A DNA stretch of 64,000 nt from Hyaloraphidium curvatum SAG 235-1 (Eukaryota; Fungi; Monoblepharomycota). A model generated the notes under the pieces. It had not been told where the DNA came from. It did no database searches and worked only from the letters and a program-made list of their open reading frames with translations. Of this stretch, positions 736-44,407 are shown in pieces. Position numbers and translations under genes: made by a program. The stretch lies in assembly GCA_025558095.1 (NCBI GenBank), contig JAIVFI010000010.1:620001-684000 (forward strand), read 5' to 3'. Numbering within the stretch: the stretch's first letter is position 1; each line of letters begins with the position of its first letter.

Positions 736-2702
736 ATGACGGAGGACGCGGAGATTCTGACTTTCGAAGATGCCCCTTCGCTGGAGGATACGTTGCGTGC
801 CATGTTGCAGAGGGATGTCGGAGTCTACCATTACGAGCTGAACCGCGGCCGAGTTCCCCGCTTCATCAAAGACTATGGGGCCCGGGGAGCCGCGGAGGAC
901 AGGCCCATCGCGGACTGGATCCTGCGGTACGGCTCTCTGAACACTACTGCGGACGTTGCTGGGGCGGAGCCCGATGAGGAGGACGACGATGGCGCAGAGG
1001 ACGACGAAGAGTTCGACGAGCACGACGACGCCGCACCCGACGGGACTCGGCGGCCGTATTTGACCACGCCTAAGGCTATCGTGAATCAAACAGTCAAGGG
1101 AATGGCGCTCCAAGTCGTGGCTGCCGACGGCAACATCAGCCGCGACCAGGCCTGCCGTGTTGCGCTCACCGGTTAGCACAATATGCAGACCGCTTGGCCG
1201 CACGCAACGGACGAGCTGCTGGACGCGATGACGGAGGCGCTGGACGGAGCAAGGGAGGTCTTCCTGCGCAAGTACCCGACCTACGTCGCGGACAACCTGG
1301 GCCGCACGGTCTGGTCGCACATCATCAACGTCAAGCCGGCATTCCGCACCCCCCAGCGGCTCGCCGCGATGCTGGTGGACGCGGCTCTCCCGGGCGGACC
1401 AGATCGAGCGGGTGTTCGGACCGCTGAACAACGTGCGGAGGTAGAGCCTTTCGTCTTCCTTCCGGGCGGAACAAAGATCCGCTTCAACCCGAGAGGGCGA
1501 GCCTCGAGCCTGAACCAGAATGACGCGGCAAGGGGGGCTCACACCAATCTGGCACGGGCGATGATGAAGCCTGGGACCGACGAATCGATCGTTGCCGCGG
1601 CTGCGACGTGTTTCAGCCGCGCTCTGCGGGCCTCAAAGAGCGACGTCTGCGATCTCGTTCTGTCGCAGATTGACGCGAATGGCGTCTTCTAGTGGGTACT
1701 TCCAGCTTGCACTGTCATTTGCTAACGCACGTCATTCATTTAGCGGATACCAGCCGCTGACCTCGACGACTGGCTTCTATCATCAGATCGATCCTGAAGC
1801 CAAGCCCTACACATGCCTCCACCCGCACCTCGACCACAACCACCACGACATGCCCGGCATATTTCGTACGATCGAAGGGATTGATCTCTCGCCTTTCAAA
1901 GGTGGTTGGCAATCGTCTCCTTTTGCACTTGTTCTGATTCTGCTTGCCTCAGAACACCTGCTGCCCGAAGGCACCCGAGGCGCGGTCTTCCTCATTCGCG
2001 CAGGCGCCAAGGTCGACCTGTACAAGAACCTCACTATCGTCGCCTGCTGCCTAAACATGTTCAAGGACCAGACGAGTTCCGAAACCGCCCTGATTCGCCT
2101 TGCGAAAGCGAAGCTGTTCCACGAGAAGGACGGTGTTGCCGGCAAGCAAGGGTACGAAGCACCCCCTCCCGGTTACCTCGCGAAGCTCCTAGCCTACAAG
2201 CGGAAGGGTTGCGAGAAGTGGAACGTCAAGCATCCCGATCGTCCTCGGACATTGACGATGGAACTTGAGGATGCGGAGCACATGTGGGAGGAGGTCAAGG
2301 GATGGTGCAAGGGCACGGGGGAGTCGCTTGTGAAACAGGCTTCCTTCAATCGGTGGGTTGCATCCTTCATGGTCGTATCATTTCCTGATTCGTCTGCTTG
2401 CGCACAGGCTGCTGGATGAACACGAGCGGTACGGTGGTGTTGGTGACGGGAAGCTTTTCAAGGACGCCGGGTACCATGTCGTCAAACGGGAGGGCCACCC
2501 CGTTGTCTACGGGGTCGATCTGGTCTCGAAGGCCTTCAACAAGTTCATGATGCAGTCGTCTTTCGCGACTGCTCCTGAGGTGATTCTTGCCTTTGACTTC
2601 TCGGGCCTTGACCTGGGAGACATCGAGAGCTACGTGTACGAGCCGATACCTGCGGACGACGAGGATGACGCGGACGAGTGGGACGACGGACTTGAGAACT
2701 AG
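736..2702 (+). CDS. Orphan multi-exon protein with possible HNH/His-Me nuclease-like motifs
   Basis: Four consecutive ORF pieces. Introns 1692-1743 (gt...ctaac...ag) and 2353-2407 join them in frame; the first junction near 1150-1188 is unresolved. Motifs are PHLDHNHH and NLTIVACCLNMFK, with acidic tracts at both ends. Confidence 0.55.
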
Positions 2703-33510: not shown

Positions 33511-34749
33511 CTGCATTGTATGCGATTGAAACGGCTTGCCCCATCGGCATTGACGCTGAGGAGGGTTCCGATTTTGCGTGCTCGTTAGGCCGGTTCGAAG
33601 CAGGTTGCCGACTGCCCGCGCGCGAAGACCTGAACGGTTTCACGATTTCGGCACTCCCAAGCCCGCCTTTGCGCTCCCAAGCCCGCCTTTGCGCTCGCGC
33701 CGAGATCGGTCGGAACCGTCTTTGACGGATTCTCCGCGCCCGTTCTGCAGAAGCTCATCGTGATCGAAAGCGGCGATCTTACTACGATCGACGACGTTCG
33801 CCCGGTGGTCGGGGAGGGCGTCGAGATCGTCGGGACTTCCGGGTGGGTGGGAGGTCCGGCTAAGACCAGGAGGTGGCCAGAACTGAACGCCGCGATCCTC
33901 CAACCTTAAAAGCGCTCTGCACCAGCCCGCGTTGCGTGGAAGGACCGGCGCAGCTCCATGGTTTCCGCGTTACCCGGTGGGAAAGGAGCGACGCGAACTC
34001 CGAACGGGCGTCGAACTCCGCTCCCGCGCGCGAGTCGCGCAAACTCAGCACATCGGTCCAACTTCCTGCGACAATCTGCGCTTCACTGCGCCCCTCGCCT
34101 AGACCTGTTTTGCCGTGCCTGCGCTCTGCGGGCCGCCGCCGCGATGAGGCGGACAGCCGGGACCGCCGACCCGGCTCGGCCGAATGTCTCCACCGGCAAC
34201 ACCCACGTAAGCAGCTCTTTGAAAACGCTCCAGAATCGTTCATTTTGTCCTCATGTGTCGTCTTTTGCCGTCGTTTATCGTCCTTTGCCGGCCTATAGCG
34301 GCCTATACCGGCCTATGTCACCCTCTGCCCCCTCTGCTGCTCGCGGCCTTTGTCCCCCTATATCGGCCTATATCAGCCTACATCGACATGTACGGCCTAT
34401 ATTTCGAAAATTTGAGCCTTTGCGGGCGCCTGTTTGGACATATTGGCGATGGGATAGCAGCAACGGGGTCAGGGGGGCCCTGACAGAGCAGCAAACGATA
34501 CCATCGATCAAGACAAAATCGTGACTGAGCAACAAACGATACCATCGACGATATACATAATGTACGGCATCTCCAGTAATCGAGACAGATCGAGACAGCC
34601 AAGTGCCCTGAGCTCCACAAGACGAAGAGTGCGCCTGGGCTCTGGAGGAAGCATTCAGATCCAGCAGCGACCACGCGCGATGTAGGGCTGACTCTGAAGC
34701 GAGACAAATCCGCGATCAGAACATCCCGAGTCAAGTTTACTCGATTCGT

Positions 34750-36409
34750 TCACAAAGCGACGGCATCCCAGTAGAACCCAGCGCGTCCCTCCGAACGGTC
34801 CTCTCCGACCAGGCTCTCGGGCAGCTCCCAATCCGCGCCGGGCGCGGGCACCGCGACGTGCACGCCCCTCTCGGCGCAAAGCCCCGCGAACGCGGGCGCC
34901 ATCCCCGCGATGCTCATCCCGTACTTCTTCCCCAGCCCGGTCAGCAAGGCACCGCACCGCTCTCCACCCCTTTTCGACACTCTTCCGACCGCGCCCTCCG
35001 CAGCGCCGCGTCCTCGTACGTCTCCCCGATCAGTTCCTCCCTGTCGTCGATCCCGCCAAGCAGCTGCAGGCCGGTTTTGAACACGGACGGCGCGAGCATG
35101 TAGTACGCGCCCTCCAGCGTCCGATCCTGCCGCATTCCCGCCTTGAGGAACGACGCGAACCACAGCGCCCGCGCCAGCGCGGAGCCTTCGAACCCGGCCG
35201 CCGCGAGCCGCTCCATCACGCAGGCCTCGTGCACGAGGACGAGCTGCACCGCGATCCGGGCGTGCGCATACGAGGGGTAGTACGGCTCCCAGTTGGCGAA
35301 GAAGGGGCCGCTATCGCCCCGCGCAAACGCCGAGCGGAGGTCCTCGGGGACGGCCTGCATGATCGAGTCGGTAATCGCCGACAGGCTCGCCGCAAGCTGC
35401 TTGCGCGATGACGCGGGGGCGCCTTTGACGGCAAGCAGGAGGTGCTCCGCAAAGTTGGCGAGCTCCATGTGGCACAGGACCGAGCCGTAGCCCGAGTAGG
35501 CGAGGGCGGCGACGGAGCGGGCGTAAAGGGCGAGGTCCCCTACGGAGCCTTCCGAGAACTGCACGATCGGGGGCGAATGCGAGTTCCATACGCCGTGCAG
35601 ATTCGCGAAAGCCGATTTCCAGTCCGGGCGGTCGAACCACCGCTCGCTGGAGGGGAGCAGCCGTTCCCCGGAGGTGTAGTGGATCCCGAAACAAGGCATG
35701 CCGCTGGCCCCCGAAGCTCCCTGATCGAACGCGCAAACAGCAAGGCGAAGACGCGACACCGACTCGGCGTACAGCCAGGCATCCGCCGTCTCGGAACGCC
35801 GGGGAGTAACGAATGCACCAGGCGCCCCGACAGTTTCACGGCGCGGCGCAGGAGCGGGATCGTCTGCGCCTGCTTCCCCGCTAGTGCAGTAGCGTCCAAC
35901 AGCAGCATGTATGCCTGCGCCGACTCGAGGTCACCGCTGCTGCCCGCCACGAGGTGCTTGTGGGCGGCCTCCACGAATTGGAACAGCACTTGAAAGCGGC
36001 TCTTCTTGGAGAGCCCGGGGAGGAGCCGGGCGGCCGCAGCCGCGGTGGCCCACGCCAGCCCGAGAGGAGGTTTCTTGTAGAGGCAGTTGGGTTCGATGAA
36101 GGCCGCCTCGAACGCCCCGCGATGGAGCAACGGGATGAGGGAGAACAGGCTCTCCCGGAAAAAGCAGTCCACGGCCGCGCGCAGCTCCGGCGGGAACGCG
36201 CTGTGGGAGCCCCGTCCCGCGGGCATGCCGCCATCTGCTTCCTCGCGCGCCGCGGCGCTGTTGACGGCGATTGTTGAGGAGCCGTCGTCCGCGAAGTCGC
36301 AGTTGCCACCGCGGTGCTCCTCGGCCGCTTCCGCGGCCAGCGCCGCCTCGGCAGCGAGCGCACACAATTCGCTCCAGTCGCGTCCGTCGTCGATGCCGTC
36401 TTCGGACAT
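34750..36409 (-). pseudogene. Frameshifted paralogue of the Fungal_trans-like gene at 42175-43830
   Basis: Colinear with the intact paralogue but split over three frames, by a 1 nt loss at ~35793 and a 2 nt gain at ~34962. Confidence 0.8.
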
Positions 36410-36500
36410 GGCGATAAGGCCCGTCGGTCTTGTCTGAGGAGTGGGTAGATCCCCTGAGCCTAAATTGTTCACGAGCCGGCTCTGTGGCTCGCCGAGCAAC

Positions 36501-38356
36501 TCAGCGCGTAAGCACTACGCTTACCAAGGCCACTAGGCTACCTCGGGTGCGAACCATAGTTCGCCCCCAGGCGAATTCGGGAGGCGCCTGCACCGTCAAA
36601 GTCGAGGTCACGGGCGGCAGCTGCACCGTCAAAGTCGAGGTCACGGGCGGCAGCTGCACCGTCAAAGTCGAGGTCACGGGCGGCAGCTGCAGAGTCTCGG
36701 TGCTCGTCACGGGAGGGAGCTGCACCGTCGCGGTGGAAACGACCGTGATCGGGTTGCATCCAACGGGGGGAGTGGTCGCGGCGTGGGGTGGAGCCGACGG
36801 CGTCGTCGATGCCCGGAGGGTCGAGGTACGGCGGGCGGTAGTGGAAGCAGCACCGGAAAACGTCTTTGCCGTCAAAGTGCGGCTGGCGCCCGCCGTCCTG
36901 CTCCTGGTGGCGGTGCGGGAACGGGTGGTCGTTCGGCTACGGGTGCGGGTGCTCTGCGGAGCCACCGGGGCCACCTCGTTGCGGAACCCGGCGATCTCGG
37001 CGGCGACGTTGTTGAGCGAGCGGGCGTTGTCGGCGCGATCCACTTCGCCGGTCGCGCGGTTGTTGTAGTTGACGTTCGGGTTCGAAAAGTGAGCGATGGT
37101 GGGGCAGTTGACGACATCGCAGTCGTAGGCCCTTGGGATGCACAAACCACGTCAGCATACACAAGGATGCGCGCCCATGCATCTTGCTCACATGATAGTT
37201 CTGAAGCTGGCCTGTCCCTCGACGTGCTGGTACCCGTAGGAGTAAGCGAATGCGCCTGGAGAACCCCCGGCGTTGGCGGCGTCGTGGTCGCAGCCCATGT
37301 TGTGGCCGCACTCGTGGGCAAGCGTAAAGTCCGCGATGCATTCCGCGCTGCTGACCGCGAAACCCCAGTCGTCGTTGCCGGCCGTGCCCGGATCGGTGAG
37401 GATCCAGCCTTTGCCGCAGTACGCGTCATCGTCGATATACAGGTGCACGAGGTCCGCCCCGTACTCGTCCCTCAGGGCATGCACGCTGTCCATGTAGCCG
37501 TCGTCGGTGCCGTCGGAAATCGTCCCAATCGTAGTTGACCTGGGCCACGTGCACGAGCCGGAACCGGATGTTGACCAGGCTGTTCCTGAACGCATCGTTG
37601 GCGAGCTCGATGTCGTGCTCGTAGATCTGCTGGGGGTTGGCCGCGCCCCACGCACGCGCCGATGCGGGCGTGTAGAGTCCGAAGATGTCGACAGTAAAGA
37701 TGCCATCGGGGCCGGGGAGGGCCTGGCGCCGGCTGAGCCGGGGCTCGCTCGTGTGGTTCGCAGCGGAGGGCTTCTCGGGGTGCGCGAAGCTGGGCTTCGC
37801 AGTCAGGTTGACCTGCTTGATACGGTGCACGCCGGGGCCGTCCGGAAGGATCTAAGCAAGGCGAAGGACAGGTCAGACCGACAGCACCATCATGCACACG
37901 AGCACAAACCTTGTAGGTGCCAGAGGCCGTGATGACGGTGCCGATGATGTTGCCGGACGGCGAGGCGGTGAGCGCGACGTAGCTGGTCCCGTACAGGTCC
38001 AGGTCCCCGAGCCAGGTCGTCGACCGGCCGGAGTCGACCACCTGCTTGCACACGGCGGAGAAGGATGCGTCCTTGAACAGCGGCAGCGAGATTCGGTCGG
38101 GGCCGCCGGCGGCGAGCAGGCGGGGGTTGGCACTGACCCGGCGCTCCCGGACGGAGAACCGATCAGGGCGGTCAGGGCGGGCGCCGGGGAGCGCGTCCAT
38201 GGGCGGGAGGTCGGCAAAGAGGGAGGGAGCCTCGGCGGCGCTCGCCGTGCCGGCCAGGAGCAGCGTACAAAAGAGCATCGCCAAGACACCTCGGGCAGCA
38301 TAGCGGCGTTCGCCGGATCGAATCGCGGCGGATCCCGCGGCGCGACCGGCGGGCAT
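36501..38356 (-). CDS. Secreted reprolysin-like (M12/M72-type) metzincin metalloprotease; apparent frameshift at ~37527
   Basis: Signal peptide, HALRDEYGADLV, CGKGW, HECGHNMGCDH, Met-turn FRTIM, HFSNP and a Thr/Arg-rich linker. Confidence 0.82.
36589..36729. repeat. 33 bp coding tandem repeat (3 exact + 1 degenerate) encoding TSTLTVQLPPV
   Basis: tgcaccgtcaaagtcgaggtcacgggcggcagc occurs 3 times at 36589-36687. Confidence 0.92.
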
Positions 38357-39298: not shown

Positions 39299-41753
39299 CT
39301 AAGTGCTGAAGTACATGCGAATGTCTCCATCCTGCGCCTCCTCATCCTCGTCCGCGTCCGACAGCCCAGCGAGGCGGATCACGACCCGATCCGCGATCAT
39401 CCCCAGAACCTCGGATACGTCCTCGTCCGCGCGGCCCGTGCCCAGCCCGAGGTCCTCCGCGAGCACGTCCAGAATATCTTGGCGCAGAATGGCGAAGCCG
39501 CTGAACGGCCGCGTCAGGAAGACCTGCGAAACGCTGCCCGTGTGCTCCCCGTCCACGACCACCGCACCTAGGCCAACGTCGCGGATGCGTACAACGCGGC
39601 CCATGGTAGCCATGACCGCGGTCTTCTGCTCGTCGAAGCGCGTCCTTTTGAAGTCCGAATGGAACCAAGCGCCGTCGAACTCCAGCATGACCCGTTCGCC
39701 ATCCGGTCCCAGGAAGTGGGCGTCCACGCGCAGATCTTTCCGCGTCTGAGGGTGGGGCAAGATCTCCGTCATTGCCTTGTGGACCATCTCGACCGCCCGT
39801 TCAGGGTCCCAGATCCACCCATCTCCGAAGACGGCGAAGAGGTAGCAGACGACGGCGTGAACCTCCGAGATCGACCGCCCGGGCAGCTTCTTCTTCAAGG
39901 CTTTGCACAGGGCCTCGCCGAGCTTCCCGTTCCGCTGCTCGGGATCCGGGCACCGGGAAACGACCGAGCCGTGCTGGCAGGCGGCGTGCGTCCTCTTGTG
40001 CTTGGCCAGCGAAGCGGTCTGCGTGAACGCCATGCCGCATCCCAAGTAATCGCATGAGTAAGGCCGCTCCCCGGTATGGACCCGCCGATGGGTGACGAGA
40101 TGGGTGGAGCAGGCGAAGGCCATGATGCAGCCTTCAAAGTCGCATGGATACGGCCGCTCCCCAGTATGGCTCCTCCGGTGCACAAGAAGAGAGCCAGACG
40201 TCGAATAGGTCACGCCACACCCCTCGAACTCACACGTGTAGGGTCGTTCGCCGGTGTGAGTCCTTTGGTGCTTCGCAAGCCCTCCAGACTCGGAAAACGA
40301 CATGCGGCACCCCTCAACGTCGCACGCATAAGGTTTTTCGCCGGTGTGGGTTCTCCTGTGGATGACGAGAGAGCCGGGCGTCGTGAGCGCCTTCCCGCAG
40401 CCCGCGAAGTCGCAGCCGTAGGGCCGCTCCCCAGTATGCGTCCGTTTGTGCGTCACTAGATTGCCGGAGCAGGTGAAGGCCTTACTGCACCCCTCGAAAT
40501 CGCACGCGTAAGGTCGTTCGCCCGTATGGACCCGCTTGTGCGTGACAAGACCGCCGGATGTGGCGAACATTCTGCTGCATCCTTCGAAGTCGCACTGGTA
40601 GGGCCGGTCGCCCGTATGGGTCCGCTTGTGCGTCGTGAGACCGCCAGGCCAGCGAAAAGTTGCCAGTGTGTTTCCTTCTGTGCTTGACCAGAGCGCCTTT
40701 CTCCACGAACGCCCTGCCGCATCCCACAAAATCACATGGGTATGGCCGCTCTCCGGTGTGGATGCGCAGGTGTGTGACGAGAGAAGTCCGGGCAGCAAAT
40801 GCCATGGTACATCCCTCGAAACTGCACAGGTATGGTCGCTCCCCAGTGTGCTTCCGTTTGTGCGTGGTCAGGTTGCCCAGCCGAGCAAATGCCCTCCCAC
40901 ACCCGTCGAAATTGCACTCATAGGGCCGGTCCCCAGTATGGGTCCGTTTGTGATTGACAAGCGGACCCGAGGTGGCAAAAGACTTGCCGCACCCCTCGAA
41001 ATCGCACAGATATGGCCGCTGCCCCGTGTGCGTCCGCTTATGTGCATGGAGCTGAGCCTTGGTCCTCACGGCCTTGCCACATCCCTCAAATTCGCACACA
41101 AGGGGCCGCTCCTCCGTGTGCGTCAGCTCGTGCTTGACAAGATTGCCAGAAGTTGTGAAAGCCTTATTGCACAATGAGCACCGGTAGGGCCGCTCGTCCG
41201 TATGGACGCGCTCGTGATCCTTGATGTGGTGCTTCAGCTTGAACGTCTTTCCGCAGGTGGTGCACCTAAAGGGTCGCTCTCTGTCGTGGAACTGCTTCGC
41301 ATGAATGGTGCGCTCGCCTTTCGAGGCGAAGACCTCGACACAGGGCGGCCACTGGCACGGGAACCTGTTGTCGCCATTGCCCTCGTCTCCGCTGTCCAAA
41401 TGACCCGAGCTGCCGTCGGCGGATCCGGCCTCCCCGGAATCGCTAGTCGCTTCGTCCATCGAGCCGGCCGAACCCGAGTCATCCGAAACAGTCGCGAGGC
41501 CTTCGCCGCGCCGCGCGCGCTTCGTCGGACCACGCGCGGGGCCGACGTCCTCCTCCTCATCGCTGCTGATCTCGATCACAACCCTCTTCGCCTTCCGGGG
41601 CGCGGCAGCTGGCGTGCTCTCGTCGTGCGCTGCGTCGCTCACTTCGCCTGGCGCCGCTGCGCCCTGCAGCATCGCGGCGGACGGTCCCCGGGCGGGCGCT
41701 TTCGCGGCTCCGGCGAGCGGTGCGCTCTTACGCGCGGTAGGGATATCCGGCAT
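39299..41753 (-). CDS. Tandem C2H2 zinc finger array (15 complete + 1 broken finger) fused to a DUF559/Vsr-like endonuclease domain; frameshift at ~40661
   Basis: HTGERPY-C-x4-C repeats in ORFs 40482..41753 and 39299..40798. C-terminal LRVDAHF...MLEFDGAWFH...RFDEQKT...GRVVRIRD. No introns seen. Confidence 0.85.
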
Positions 41754-42174
41754 AGTCGCCTGGAAAACTGGAGTTGAGAGCGAACTGGCACAGCGGCGTC
41801 AGCTCGCCACCAGCCCAGTGCCCCTGCTGATGCACCGGGACCACAGAGTAGCTAGAGCGCACTGATTCCGGCGTAAATTGTATACTATCCCGCCGGTCTC
41901 CTTCGGAATCAGCACCACATGTACCGTTCCAGTGACATTCGGAGTGATTTGAGAGGGCCAAGTGCTGACTGACATCGTCTTCAGAAGCAGATCACTCTGT
42001 GCCCCGAAAGTCTGGATGATGCAAGCAAGCCCGCGGTGATCTACACGACGTGTCAATGGAACGTCCACGACGACGATATGCTTGCTTTGCGAAGGCCGTC
42101 AGTACTTCCAAGGGTCGCCAAGCTCGAAAGGCAGCGATACTTCCGATACTTCATCCATGCCATTTGTTCATCCT

Positions 42175-43830
42175 TCACAACGCAACGGCATCCCAGTAGA
42201 ACCCTGCGCGTCCCTCCGATCCGTCCTCCCCCACCAGGCTCTCGGGCAGCTCCCAATCCGCGCCGGGCGCGGGCACCGCGACGTGCACGCCCCTCTCGGC
42301 GCAAATCGCCGCGAACGCGGGCGCCATGCCCGCGATGCTCATCCCGAACTTCTTCCCCAGCCCCACGAGCAGCGCTCCGATCAGCTCGATCCCCTTCCGG
42401 CACTCGTCCGACCGCGCCAGGCGCAGCGCTGCGTCCTCGGGCGCCTCCCCGATCAGCTCCGAGCGCGTGTCGATGCCGCCCAGCAGCTGCAGGCCCGCCT
42501 TGAACGCCGGGGGCGCCAGGAGGTAGTACATACCCTCCATGATCCTGTCCTGACGGACCACGCCCTTGAGGAACGATGCAAACCAGAGGGCGCGGGCCAG
42601 AGCGGCCCCTTCGAAGCCCGCGATTGCGAGGCGGTCCATCACGCAGCCTTCGTGCACGAGGAGGAGCTGCACGCAGACCCGGACGTGAGCATAGGACGGG
42701 TAGATCCGCTCCCAGGTCGAGTAAAAGGGGCCGCTATCGCCGGCGAGAAATGACGATCGCAGGTCCTCGGGGAGGGCCTGCAGAATCGAGTCCGTGATGG
42801 CAGACAGGCTCGCCGCGAGCTGCTTGCGCGAGCCCGCGGGGGCACGCTTGACGATAAGCAGGAGGTTCTCCGCAAAGTTGGCGAGCTCCAGGTGGCACAG
42901 TGCGGAACCGTAACCAGAGTAGGCGTAGGCTGCGACGGAGCGAGCGTAGAGGGCGAGGCCCGCCACTGCGGCCTCAGAGAACATCACCATGGGGGAATGC
43001 GCCTTCCACATGCCTTGCAATTCAGCAAAAGCAGACGTCCAGTCCGGACGGTCGAACCAGCGTTCCCCGGAGGGGAGCAGCCGTGGGCCGTGCGCGTGGT
43101 AGTGCGTCCCGAAGCACGGCATCCCGCTAGCATCGCTCGCATTCTGGTCGAACGCACACACCGCCAGGCGCAGGCGCGTCACAGACTCGGCGTAGATCCA
43201 GGCATCCGCGTCCTCGGGAATCCCGGGGGGAAGAGCGCGCACCAGGCGCTCGGACAGCTTGACGGCGCGCCGCAGCAACGGGATCGTGTGCGCCTGCTTC
43301 CCCGCCAGCGCCGTTGCGTCCAGCAGAAGCATGTACGCCTGAGCCGACTCGAGGTCGCCGCTGCTGCCCGCGACGAGGTGCCTCTGGGCGGCCGCCACGA
43401 ACTGGAACGTCAGCTCGAAGCGGCTCTTCTTGGAGTGGCCGGGGAGCATGCGGGCGGCGGCGGCCGCGGCGGCGTAGGCCAGTCCGAAGGGAGGCGTCTT
43501 ATAGAGGCAGTTGGGTTCGATGAAGGCCGCCTCGAAGGCCCCCCGGTGGAAGAGCGGGACGAGCGCATACATAGATTCGCGGTGGAAGACGTCGACCGCC
43601 GGCCGCAGTTCCGGCGGGAACGCGGTCCCGGCGCCCGGCCCCGCAGGATTGCCTGCCGCGGACGCGGCAGAGACGTCGGCGCTGTTGTTGGCGACGGTCG
43701 AGGAGCCGTCGTCGGCAAAGGCATCGCCGCCTTCATGGTGCTCCGCGGCCTCGGCGGCCAGCGCCGCCTTGGCGGCCAGCACACACAGCTCGCTCCAGTC
43801 GCGCCCGTCTTCGCTGCCGTCTTCGGACAT
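42175..43830 (-). CDS. Fungal transcription factor-like protein (Fungal_trans-like domain, no Zn cluster)
   Basis: Open frame from MSEDGS. FHRESMYALVPLFHRGAF and LAYAAAAAAAR resemble the middle homology region. Confidence 0.7.
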   Translation of the reverse strand: MSEDGSEDGRDWSELCVLAAKAALAAEAAEHHEGGDAFADDGSSTVANNSADVSAASAAGNPAGPGAGTAFPPELRPAVDVFHRESMYALVPLFHRGAFEAAFIEPNCLYKTPPFGLAYAAAAAAARMLPGHSKKSRFELTFQFVAAAQRHLVAGSSGDLESAQAYMLLLDATALAGKQAHTIPLLRRAVKLSERLVRALPPGIPEDADAWIYAESVTRLRLAVCAFDQNASDASGMPCFGTHYHAHGPRLLPSGERWFDRPDWTSAFAELQGMWKAHSPMVMFSEAAVAGLALYARSVAAYAYSGYGSALCHLELANFAENLLLIVKRAPAGSRKQLAASLSAITDSILQALPEDLRSSFLAGDSGPFYSTWERIYPSYAHVRVCVQLLLVHEGCVMDRLAIAGFEGAALARALWFASFLKGVVRQDRIMEGMYYLLAPPAFKAGLQLLGGIDTRSELIGEAPEDAALRLARSDECRKGIELIGALLVGLGKKFGMSIAGMAPAFAAICAERGVHVAVPAPGADWELPESLVGEDGSEGRAGFYWDAVAL

Positions 43831-44407
43831 GGCGGCAAAGGCGTCGACGTGTCCTCGTCCTTGTGGTCCCTTCTTGGCAGCCGTTGAGTCAGCGCCACAT
43901 GCCGATGAAAAGACACTCGATTCGAGCAGCAGACGATGGCAATGTGTCTCCGACACGGACTCTGCAATCGCTGGCTCCAAACCATCATAGGTGCACTGAT
44001 GCGAATCGTCCACGGTATCCCGGCGCCTCCCACTTTGCTGCAGGCACCAAACCCGGCCCAACCTGTTGTGGAACTGCTCCTTTGCGCAGAGGCAGAAAAG
44101 CTCGCTGTCCGCCGTGACCGCCGTCTTCCGCTCCGCAGAGCGACATTCAACGCCGACGACTTGGGATTCCAGCTCAAAGAAAAGAAAAGCCGAATGCGCC
44201 ATGTTTCTCTCCTCGAACCCAACATTCGACGGTGCCGCATTTGAAGCTACGATCGATGGGCTCGCAAGGTTCAATGCCTGTTGCATTTGATGGGGCGTCG
44301 GCGGCAGAAAGCCCGGTCGCAGAACCAAACGAACGACTCGTCCCCGGGCCCCCGAGAGGCGTGCACTCGCCCGTCCTCTCCGCCTCCACGAGTCTCTCTT
44401 CATCATA

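What the first reader, a model, noticed from the sequence alone, without database searches (positions are those of the whole stretch)
39299..41753. Natural zinc-finger nuclease: ~16 C2H2 fingers fused to a DUF559/Vsr-like endonuclease domain
Seen: eight fingers, one half finger and seven more fingers with canonical TGERP linkers and varied recognition helices. They are followed by ~220 aa containing RVD-x12-EFDGAWFH-x7-D-x2-K-x8-VVRIRD (EFDG region 39659-39688). Established: this matches the DUF559/Vsr-like PD-(D/E)XK signature (D...ExDG..H...D..K/R...G..VxR), and all of those positions are intact. Inference: a long modular DNA reader joined to a nuclease is the architecture of engineered ZFNs and is not a standard fungal TF. 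The gene is intronless, whereas most core genes here are spliced. That suggests a selfish (homing-like), giant-virus-derived or genome-defence element.
Basis: partly seen in the sequence, partly recalled or inferred. Interest (0 to 1): 0.9.

Follow-up and report, generated by a model that had tools for sequence, protein, structure and literature searches.

The report
Broken zinc-finger/Vsr-like nuclease fusion gene
This stretch of the water fungus Hyaloraphidium curvatum holds one frameshifted copy of a six-locus family that joins long C2H2 zinc-finger arrays to a homing-endonuclease-type (Vsr/EDxHD) DNA-cutting domain, the layout of an engineered zinc-finger nuclease, not found in the papers searched.

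Summary
On the minus strand, 39299-41753 encodes 8 C2H2 fingers, a truncated finger and 7 more fingers. A Cys/His knuckle and a ~170-aa domain follow. That domain keeps every residue of the EDxHD/Vsr catalytic set.

The caveat is that this is not one reading frame. A 38-nt loss in finger 9 (~40657-40662) shifts the frame by +1. An independent run's contig is colinear across the lesion, so it is not an assembly error.

The nuclease assignment rests on a family profile that hits the I-Bth0305I homing-endonuclease catalytic domain (E 6.6e-6). Relatives pass Pfam DUF559, and fold neighbours are mostly PD-(D/E)XK nucleases, but only at middling scores.

The genome has six loci. C15, C7 and C28 are intact. 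C10 (this window), C17 and C8 each carry one lesion.

Paralogue domains show dN/dS 0.14-0.20 with saturated dS. The family is therefore old and constrained, and the lesions are recent. No transposon, intron or intein context was found.

Outside this fungus the same domain follows EsV-1-7 arrays, CxHG-type Cys-repeat arrays and phage DUF4379 arrays. A PIP-box-like tail ends the eukaryote-type members.

This scan had already found the family on another contig (s1-704282).

Verdict: a recently disabled copy of a new eukaryotic variant of the EDxHD/Vsr nuclease lineage. Cleavage is untested.

The parts
41364..41753 (-). N-terminal low-complexity region of ORF1. It starts M-P-D-I, a degenerate form of the M-x-D-I-R-x-[YF]-[FL] start of the C15 and C17 copies, with 5 aa missing. 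It contains a SUMO-interaction-like hydrophobic+acidic patch (VVIEISSDEEED, 41582-41547) and a basic KAKR patch.
   Evidence: The motif readings are inference.
40662..41363 (-). Fingers 1-8 of the C2H2 array (frame of ORF 40482-41753), ending in HTG at 40662.
   Evidence: Pfam zf-C2H2 and zf-H2C2_2 hits; finger list; 90-nt repeat register.
40610..40661 (-). Truncated ninth finger: 52 nt instead of 90. The 38-nt loss removes the Cys half and shifts the frame by +1 at a TTTT run (~40657-40662). The upstream frame then runs out of register to a stop at 40482.
   Evidence: Sequence; spacing 322 = 3x90+52; lesion present in the X1 contig with 0 gaps.
39986..40600 (-). Fingers 10-16 (frame of ORF 39299-40798), 30-aa units with TGERP linkers.
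   Evidence: Variation among 48 family fingers peaks at helix positions -1, +3 and +6.
39905..39979 (-). Cys-His knuckle (C-x-H-G-x6-C...C) between the array and the nuclease core. It is kept in all family members whatever the upstream array type.
   Evidence: Alignment A2: C5, H7 and G8 nearly invariant, C14 invariant. Zinc binding is inferred.
39371..39880 (-). EDxHD/Vsr-like nuclease domain. Key residues: E 39865-39863, D 39724-39722, E 39682-39680, D 39676-39674, H 39661-39659, D 39634-39632, K 39625-39623, and the VVRIRD strand ending near 39581.
   Evidence: Profile hit to I-Bth0305I (3r3p), E 0.0015 then 6.6e-6. Invariant columns. AF2 model pLDDT 85.3. Fold neighbours. Residue mapping from PMC3239194.
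39299..39331 (-). C-terminal tail with a PIP-box-like motif (D-G-D-I-R-M-Y-F; canonical Q-x-x-[ILM]-x-x-[FY]-[FY] in the C7 and C8 copies and in several outside relatives), followed by the stop codon at 39301-39299.
   Evidence: PCNA binding is inferred and was not tested.

Best explanation
The window holds a recently disabled copy of a Hyaloraphidium curvatum gene family. Its intact members are sequence-directed DNA endonucleases.

Proposed mechanism, by part:
- An N-terminal array of 10-18 C2H2 fingers reads a long DNA site.
- A conserved Cys/His knuckle links the array to a C-terminal Vsr/EDxHD-type (DUF559-clan) nuclease domain.
- That domain cuts or nicks nearby DNA by metal-dependent catalysis. 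It uses the conserved Glu, Asp, Glu-x-Asp, His and Asp-x-x-Lys residues, as the proven homing endonuclease I-Bth0305I does.
- A PIP-box-like C-terminal tail probably tethers the enzyme to the sliding clamp.

The family is a eukaryotic offshoot of the lineage of 'tandem zinc modules + EDxHD nuclease' proteins. In phages these sit in introns, in inteins or free-standing, as homing endonucleases.

In this copy a 38-nt deletion in finger 9 shifts the frame. Ordinary translation then gives an 8-finger protein with a nonsense tail and no nuclease.

Shown here: the architecture, the homology, the conserved residues, the lesion, the purifying selection and the paralogues. Inferred: DNA cleavage, the target length, clamp binding and the biological role.
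For: Architecture and lesion.

Homology to a proven nuclease:
- The family profile hits the I-Bth0305I catalytic domain at E 0.0015 with 5 sequences and at E 6.6e-6 with 18 sequences.
- Relatives P0005 and P0009 pass Pfam DUF559 gathering scores: 28.8 and 23 bits against a cut-off of 20.6.
- 15 of the 30 nearest language-model clusters are DUF559.

Catalytic residues: E43, D90, D106, G107, H111 and D120 are invariant, and K123 nearly so, across 18 members. They map onto E170, D196, N208, H213 and D222 of I-Bth0305I.

Fold:
- The AF2 model has pLDDT 85.3.
- The top PDB neighbours are almost all PD-(D/E)XK nucleases: PaqCI Z 8.1 and 7.2, Can2, Bax1, Vsr Z 6.0 and 5.5.
- The nearest Atlas models are DUF4379-array/DUF559 proteins, TM 0.52-0.57.

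Family:
- There are six loci. C15, C7 and C28 are intact ORFs.
- dN/dS is 0.14-0.20 with dS above 1.4.
- Finger variation peaks at the base-contact positions.

Relatives in homing contexts: L028 sits inside an intein and L024 sits next to a phage DNA polymerase. PMC12350094 describes CapR/DUF4379-array EDxHD/Vsr homing genes in phage group II introns.
Against: - The window domain itself is below Pfam thresholds: MTES_1575 14.5 bits against 38.2, and DUF559 not listed. The DUF559 model finds nothing in the genome.
- Fold matches are only middling. Z is at most 8.1 and the best Foldseek E is 0.026, within the range the tool calls common.
- No cleavage, binding or target data exist.
- The finger contact residues are mostly Thr, Ser and Gly, so high sequence specificity is not assured.
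- The window copy is broken, and its N-terminal motif is degenerate.
- The RNA nature of run X1 is the tool's guess.
Confidence: 0.6

Rival explanations
1. The window gene is still functional. One route is a +1 ribosomal or transcriptional slip on the TTTT run at the lesion, which would fuse the two halves with the half finger serving as a long linker. The other route is separate products: an 8-finger protein, and a 6-7-finger nuclease made from an internal start.
For: Both frames remain open for 423 and 499 codons, and they overlap by 316 nt. The frame change falls exactly on AAC-TTT-TCG, where tRNA-Phe could re-pair one base on. The branch dN/dS of this copy is still low, about 0.17. The locus appears to be transcribed as one colinear contig.
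Against: There is no conserved recoding signal, and no second example in the paralogues. Their lesions are of different kinds (a TGA in C17, a frameshift in the C8 nuclease core), which looks like random decay. A low dN/dS is also expected from a very recent lesion. The N-terminal motif of this copy is also eroded.
Confidence: 0.12
2. The family are ordinary zinc-finger transcription or chromatin factors. On this reading the Vsr-like domain no longer cuts DNA and serves for dimerisation, DNA-end or mismatch binding, or partner recruitment.
For: The long TGERP-linked arrays look like transcription factors. The paralogues are old, dispersed single-copy genes under purifying selection with no mobile-element features. 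Inactive PD-(D/E)XK domains are common (my own knowledge). One copy (C28) and one relative (P0008) have Phe in place of the Glu of E-x-D-G.
Against: The five EDxHD positions are invariant across 18 divergent members, which points to catalysis rather than scaffolding. The Glu-to-Phe position is Phe62 in active Vsr itself. Three of six copies carry fresh disabling lesions, as expected for a costly or dispensable nuclease.
Confidence: 0.17
3. The frameshift is an assembly or polishing artefact inside a tandem repeat, and the real gene is one ORF of about 16 fingers.
For: Finger arrays are repetitive and prone to collapse. Run X1 may be the same project's data rather than an independent sample.
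Against: A contig assembled independently from run X1 crosses the site with 0 gaps and 0 differences. The change is a 38-nt loss in a 90-nt register, not a homopolymer slip.
Confidence: 0.05
4. The C-terminal domain is a RAP/FASTK-like RNA-binding module, and the protein acts on RNA.
For: RAP-domain chains appear among the fold neighbours: FASTKD4 at Z 6.7 and 5.8, and a T. gondii mitoribosome protein at Z 7.0 and 6.0.
Against: Pfam lists no RAP match at E up to 1. Sequence and profile links go to DUF559 and EDxHD instead. The C2H2 arrays have canonical linkers, and their variation falls at DNA-contact positions.
Confidence: 0.03

Closest known systems
I-Bth0305I and the EDxHD/Vsr-like homing endonucleases (PDB 3R3P; PMC3239194)
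   Same: Homologous catalytic domain (profile E 6.6e-6) with the same conserved Glu, Asp, His and Asp set. Bipartite layout, with an N-terminal modular DNA-binding region and a C-terminal nuclease.
   Different: I-Bth0305I uses NUMOD/helix-turn-helix modules and sits in a phage group I intron.
CapR/DUF4379-array + EDxHD/Vsr homing endonuclease genes of phages and bacteria (PMC12350094)
   Same: Tandem small zinc modules followed by the same kind of nuclease domain. They are found by the family profile at E 1e-10 to 1e-8 and are the nearest Atlas structures.
   Different: The modules are treble-clef ones of about 55-60 aa, not C2H2 fingers. The context is prokaryotic or phage. There is no PIP-like tail.
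Engineered zinc-finger nucleases (C2H2 array + FokI cleavage domain)
   Same: The same logic and domain order: TGERP-linked C2H2 fingers at the N-terminus and a restriction-fold nuclease at the C-terminus.
   Different: The nuclease is Vsr/EDxHD-type, not FokI (FokI is only Z 4.7). The arrays are far longer. Whether it needs to dimerise is unknown. It is natural and untested.
EsV-1-7 repeat proteins of brown algae and their viruses (Pfam PF19114; IMM of Ectocarpus)
   Same: Metagenomic relatives P0008-P0015 carry 5-9 EsV-1-7 repeats directly upstream of the same nuclease domain. The knuckle before the domain resembles one such Cys/His motif.
   Different: The EsV-1-7 text I read, one brown-alga preprint, treats these proteins as possible developmental regulators. 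No held paper contains both EsV-1-7 and DUF559. The window gene has C2H2 fingers instead.
R2 retrotransposon protein and yeast HO endonuclease (my own knowledge)
   Same: Natural proteins that combine zinc fingers with an endonuclease to cut one genomic site.
   Different: R2 carries a reverse transcriptase and only 1-3 fingers; Pfam finds no RT here. HO has a LAGLIDADG/intein-derived nuclease and C-terminal Cys-type fingers.

Membership tests
C2H2 zinc-finger arrays (Pfam PF00096 / PF13465) | Repeated C-x2-4-C-x12-H-x3-5-H units above Pfam's gathering score, joined by TGERP-type linkers | tested here: met
   zf-C2H2 scores 83.6 and 101 bits against a cut-off of 25.2. zf-H2C2_2 scores 140 and 135 bits against 40. 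Fifteen complete fingers are listed.
EDxHD / Vsr-like homing endonucleases | Sequence homology to the I-Bth0305I / Vsr catalytic domain | tested here: met
   Profile of 5 paralogues against PDB sequences: 3r3p E 0.0015. Profile of 18 members: E 6.6e-6, 29.3 bits.
EDxHD / Vsr-like homing endonucleases | Conserved Glu, Asp, (x), His, Asp active-site residues | tested here: met
   E43, D90, D106, H111 and D120 are invariant in alignment A2 and present in the window copy. They are mapped through the 3r3p alignment and PMC3239194.
EDxHD / Vsr-like homing endonucleases | Vsr-like restriction-endonuclease fold | tested here: inconclusive
   The model is confident (pLDDT 85.3) and its neighbours are mostly PD-(D/E)XK nucleases. 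But Z is at most 8.1, Vsr scores Z 6.0 and 5.5, 3r3p scores Z 5.3, and the best Foldseek E is 0.026.
EDxHD / Vsr-like homing endonucleases | Homing context: inside an intron or intein, or a free-standing gene next to its own target, with empty-site alleles | tested here: not met
   No intron or intein, and the paralogue flanks share no DNA. Empty-site alleles cannot be tested with a single genome. Viral relatives do sit in an intein (L028) or next to a polymerase gene (L024).
EDxHD / Vsr-like homing endonucleases | Site-specific DNA cleavage | not testable with these tools
   Needs biochemistry.
Pfam DUF559 (PF04480) | Score at or above the gathering cut-off of 20.6 bits | tested here: not met
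   Not listed for the window protein even at E up to 1. No match in the whole genome at E 0.01. It is met by relatives P0005 (28.8), P0009 (23), P0028 and P0031.
Pfam REase_MTES_1575 (PF18741) | Score at or above the gathering cut-off of 38.2 bits | tested here: not met
   14.5 bits, E 0.039, for the window domain.
RAP domain (FASTK-type) | Pfam RAP match, or a clearly best structural match | tested here: not met
   No RAP hit at E up to 1. RAP chains score Z 5.8-7.0, no better than many DNA nucleases.
R2-type site-specific non-LTR retrotransposon | Reverse transcriptase between the zinc fingers and the restriction-like endonuclease | tested here: not met
   Pfam lists no RT domain in either ORF. 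The fingers run straight into the nuclease domain.

The most novel reading that the evidence does not exclude
Hyaloraphidium, at least one other unidentified organism, and protists or viruses carrying EsV-1-7 or CxHG-type Cys-repeat arrays harbour active, naturally modular zinc-finger nucleases. On this reading, interchangeable zinc-module arrays (C2H2, EsV-1-7, CxHG-type Cys repeats) programme a compact Vsr/EDxHD cleavage domain. A C-terminal PIP box would bring that domain to PCNA, so that cutting is coupled to replication or repair. The role could be a nuclear homing or gene-conversion drive, or a sequence-specific defence against invading DNA. This would also assign a DNA-reading role to the enigmatic EsV-1-7 repeats of brown algae.
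Probability: 0.35. Interest if true: 0.85.

Novelty: new variant of a known kind. Interest (0 to 1): 0.7.

Why it matters
Zinc-finger nucleases are regarded as a human invention. A natural, selectively maintained family with the same layout but a different and smaller cleavage domain would matter in three ways.

1. It would show that evolution reached the same design.
2. It would offer a new cleavage module and natural long-array scaffolds for genome engineering.
3. It would extend the EDxHD/Vsr homing-endonuclease lineage from phages into eukaryotic nuclei.

The same domain also follows EsV-1-7 arrays. That gives a testable hypothesis that those widespread, unexplained repeats read DNA. The PIP-like tail suggests a link between site-specific cutting and the replication clamp that can be tested directly.

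Tried and rejected
- Intron rescue of the frame: no GT...AG pair of workable length spans the lesion. The only candidate (a 64-nt GTCAAG...CACAAG) would destroy finger 8's His ligands.
- Word-indexed homologue searches found only H. curvatum's own paralogues. This reflects the tool's sensitivity, not absence, because the exhaustive HMMER search found 755 hits.
It was repeated with a closer 5-sequence set.
- Homodimer prediction of the nuclease domain gave no verdict, with a score of 0.00. This counts neither for nor against dimerisation.
- PADLOC and PHROGs gave only sub-threshold hits. Examples are PADLOC 'HEase' at E 0.003-0.013 for relatives and nothing for the window domain.
- Pfam accessions PF26176 and PF26218 are precomputed on paralogue P0001 but are not in the local library, so I could not learn what they describe. 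One of them could already cover part of this protein.
- Transposon hypothesis: blastn among 20-kb neighbourhoods of all six loci found similarity only inside the coding regions.
- Target-site prediction from the finger code was not attempted. The contact residues are mostly Thr, Ser and Gly, for which the recognition code is weak (my own knowledge), so a genome search would return noise.
- Giant-virus origin of the window block: base composition shows no distinct stretch here (GC 0.58-0.70). The large ORFs of the block were listed, but only the TF-like one was scanned against Pfam, with no hit. No search for giant-virus genes was made.
Full report
**Observation**

On the minus strand there are two long overlapping ORFs in different frames: 40482-41753 (423 aa) and 39299-40798 (499 aa). 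Pfam finds strong C2H2 signals in both (zf-H2C2_2 E 1.8e-40 and 5.3e-42). In the last 223 aa the only hit is a weak match to the restriction-like family MTES_1575 (E 0.039, 14.5 bits, cut-off 38.2).

I count eight fingers in the upstream frame and seven in the downstream frame. A 90-nt tandem register runs through 39948-41132. One spacing in it is 322 nt, which is 3x90+52. One finger unit has therefore lost 38 nt.

After the HTG of finger 8 (ending at 40662) the sequence continues with the second half of a finger, but read one base further on. No intron of workable size can restore the frame. So is the position of EFDGAWFH (39682-39659). But the gene is not one reading frame.

**The lesion is real**

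The best public run, X1, yields a 2290-nt contig lying on 39325-41614 with no differences, gaps or joints. The tool labels X1 as RNA only by guess. The contig stops near the gene's ends. The neighbouring contig has a fourfold different depth (14.2 against 58.5), which fits RNA. If X1 is RNA, both halves sit on one unspliced transcript that carries the frameshift.

**Organism and family**

A protein search returns 'hypothetical protein DFJ74DRAFT_670374 [Hyaloraphidium curvatum]' as the only close hit. It is 621 aa and 61% identical over the domain.

The domain occurs at six loci of the 31.9-Mb assembly:

| Locus | State | Detail |
|---|---|---|
| C10 (this window) | broken | frameshift in the finger array |
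| C15 | intact | 707-aa ORF with at least 10 fingers |
| C17 | broken | 15 fingers matched by my pattern, which misses degenerate ones; one TGA at a codon that is Cys in the window copy |
| C8 | broken | 11 fingers with a recently duplicated 3-finger block; frameshift just before the catalytic E-Y-D-G |
| C7 | intact | 596 aa, long-loop fingers |
| C28 | intact | 345 aa; CxHG-type Cys repeats instead of C2H2 fingers |

DNA similarity among 20-kb neighbourhoods is confined to the coding regions at about 65-70%. For the domain, pairwise dN/dS among C10, C15 and C17 is 0.14-0.20 with dS 1.5-2.0. The C10 branch is about 0.17. The family is therefore old and constrained, and the three lesions are recent.

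**What the C-terminal domain is**

- *Sequence, PDB.* A profile of the five paralogue domains finds the catalytic domain of the homing endonuclease I-Bth0305I (3r3p) as the best PDB sequence, at E 0.0015. With 18 family members the E-value becomes 6.6e-6. A DUF559 'endonuclease-like protein' (3hrl) comes second at E 0.13, which is not significant.
- *Sequence, wider searches.* An exhaustive HMMER search of 1.84 billion representatives gives 755 hits at E 0.001 or better. Relatives P0005 and P0009 pass Pfam's DUF559 gathering score. The language-model search puts DUF559 clusters nearest, 15 of 30 hits at scores of 0.92-0.94.
- *Conserved residues.* Across the 18 sequences the invariant columns are C14, S40, E43, D90, D106, G107, H111, D120 and R135. 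K123, V133 and R137 are nearly invariant.
- *Mapping to the active site.* Through the 3r3p alignment and the I-Bth0305I paper, these are E170, D196, N208 (His64 of Vsr), H213 and D222. That is the 'EDxHD' set. The paper also notes an extra acidic residue at the Vsr Phe62 position (PMC3239194). All of these are present in the window copy.
- *Fold.* The AF2 model is confident (pLDDT 85.3, pTM 0.82). Structural matches are only middling. PaqCI scores Z 8.1 and 7.2, Can2 and Bax1 about 6-7, Vsr 6.0 and 5.5, and 3r3p 5.3. The best Foldseek E is 0.026. Nearly all top rows are PD-(D/E)XK nucleases. The nearest ESM-Atlas models are DUF4379-array/DUF559 proteins, TM 0.52-0.57.
- *Formal membership.* The window domain fails the Pfam thresholds for DUF559 and MTES_1575.
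- *Conclusion.* I file it as a divergent new subfamily of the Vsr/EDxHD/DUF559 clan. This rests on profile evidence and residue conservation more than on fold scores.

**A wider architectural theme**

The closest outside relatives carry the same domain, including the Cys/His knuckle before it, behind different tandem zinc modules:

- C2H2 fingers in P0005 and P0006.
- CxHG-type Cys repeats in P0007 and P0012.
- Five to nine EsV-1-7 repeats in P0008-P0015 and P0019.

P0005 comes from another organism. A neighbouring gene on its contig is only 30% identical to its best H. curvatum match.

More distant hits have three to seven DUF4379 treble-clef modules before an MTES_1575/DUF559 domain. In IMG/VR such genes sit next to a phage DNA polymerase (L024), next to a recombinase (L020), and inside an intein of an IMPDH-like gene (L028).

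A 2025 paper describes exactly this group, CapR/DUF4379-like modules plus an EDxHD/Vsr-like domain. It reports them as homing endonuclease genes in phage group II introns and as 'a large unrecognized outgroup' (PMC12350094).

I found no paper linking DUF559 with C2H2 fingers or with EsV-1-7 repeats. The one brown-alga preprint I read treats EsV-1-7 proteins as possible developmental regulators.

**The reader module and the other motifs**

Among 48 thirty-residue fingers of the family the ligands are invariant. Entropy peaks at helix positions -1 (3.07 bits), +3 (3.15) and +6 (2.86), the canonical base contacts, and also at the first, linker-side residue of the unit (3.40). This fits DNA-reading arrays. 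The window copy's contact residues are mostly Thr, Ser and Gly, so per-finger specificity may be low.

Eukaryote-type members end in a PIP-box-like motif. It is canonical (Q-x-x-[ILM]-x-x-[FYH]-[FYLM]) in C7, C8, C28, P0007, P0011 and P0022. It is a near-miss in most others. In the window it reads D-G-D-I-R-M-Y-F. The phage group lacks it.

The C15 and C17 ORFs begin M-x-D-I-R-x-[YF]-[FL]. The window copy has lost five residues there. An [VI]-rich patch followed by Ser and acidic residues, which looks like a SUMO-interaction motif, lies in the N-terminal region of C10, C15 and C17. P0005 has a similar patch, though it did not align with theirs. All of these readings are inference.

**Interpretation**

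The intact family members are best read as sequence-directed endonucleases descended from the modular EDxHD homing-endonuclease lineage. The window copy is a freshly broken member.

The biological role is open. Old, dispersed, constrained paralogues without mobile-element features argue against a currently spreading element. Three single-lesion copies out of six fit the decay phase of a homing cycle, or selection against a costly nuclease.

Rivals are listed with their odds: recoding or split products, an inert domain in a transcription factor, an assembly artefact, and an RNA-acting RAP-like domain. A homodimer prediction gave no verdict.

**Context in the window**

The gene and a metzincin-like gene lie between two diverged direct copies (74-90% identity, spacing about 7423 nt) of a 770-aa gene that has no Pfam match. 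The left copy is itself split into two ORFs. I found no sign that this duplication is linked to the nuclease.

**Relation to earlier notes of the scan**

The same family was already reported from the C17 contig and followed up (s1-704282). Other first-stage notes cover two further C2H2 paralogues and the Cys-repeat copy. My work agrees with them. It adds:

- the read-level check of this copy's lesion;
- the selection analysis;
- the link to I-Bth0305I and the phage DUF4379 group;
- the EsV-1-7 fusions;
- the terminal motifs.

Noticed in passing
L004:1900-3351 (-) = G000:C8:527680-529131, right after the C8 paralogue: A 483-aa ORF with a weak tyrosine-recombinase match (Phage_integrase E 0.0018, below threshold) abuts the frameshifted C8 zinc-finger nuclease. 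It may be a Crypton- or DIRS-like element.
   Followed up: partly
L004:237-1784 (+), C8 paralogue: The finger array contains a very recent duplication of a 3-finger block (identical fingers repeated). The gene is frameshifted immediately before the catalytic E-Y-D-G motif.
   Followed up: partly
L003 near 2026-2028 (-), C17 paralogue: The single in-frame TGA falls at a position that is Cys in the window copy and Ser, Ala or Gly in others. That is one base away from a Cys codon. It is most simply a nonsense mutation.
   Followed up: no
P0008-P0015, P0019 (metagenomic proteins); L009:1047-2732: Arrays of 5-9 EsV-1-7 cysteine-rich repeats are fused to the same Vsr/EDxHD-like domain. This suggests that EsV-1-7 repeats read DNA. 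No paper in the library holds both EsV-1-7 and DUF559. The L009 contig also carries two ice-binding-protein genes.
   Followed up: partly
L028:4661-6964 (IMG/VR contig): A 271-aa relative of the nuclease core lies between the two halves of an IMPDH/GMP-reductase-like gene. The halves end and restart with intein-like junctions (…GGGCFVPG… and …VHNS…). It looks like an intein-associated homing endonuclease.
   Followed up: partly
window 34746-36413 and 42171-43834: Direct duplication (74-90% identity, spacing about 7423 nt) of a 770-aa gene without any Pfam match. The two copies bracket the metzincin-like gene and the zinc-finger nuclease. The left copy is split into two ORFs (34941-35759 and 35540-36499).
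   Followed up: partly
window 36578-36742: A 33-nt tandem repeat with 4 overlapping copies at 67-100% identity, in the neighbouring gene that the scan notes call a metzincin.
   Followed up: no
window 40040-40351, run X3: A 2024 freshwater metagenome holds two 151-nt pieces identical to the finger array. This organism or a very close strain seems to be present there.
   Followed up: no
P0001 (C15 paralogue as annotated by NCBI, 621 aa) against L002:31-2154: The deposited model starts at an internal Met (MIVLDSDDDD…). The conserved M-x-D-I-R start shared with C17 lies about 60 codons upstream, so the annotated N-terminus is probably too short.
   Followed up: partly
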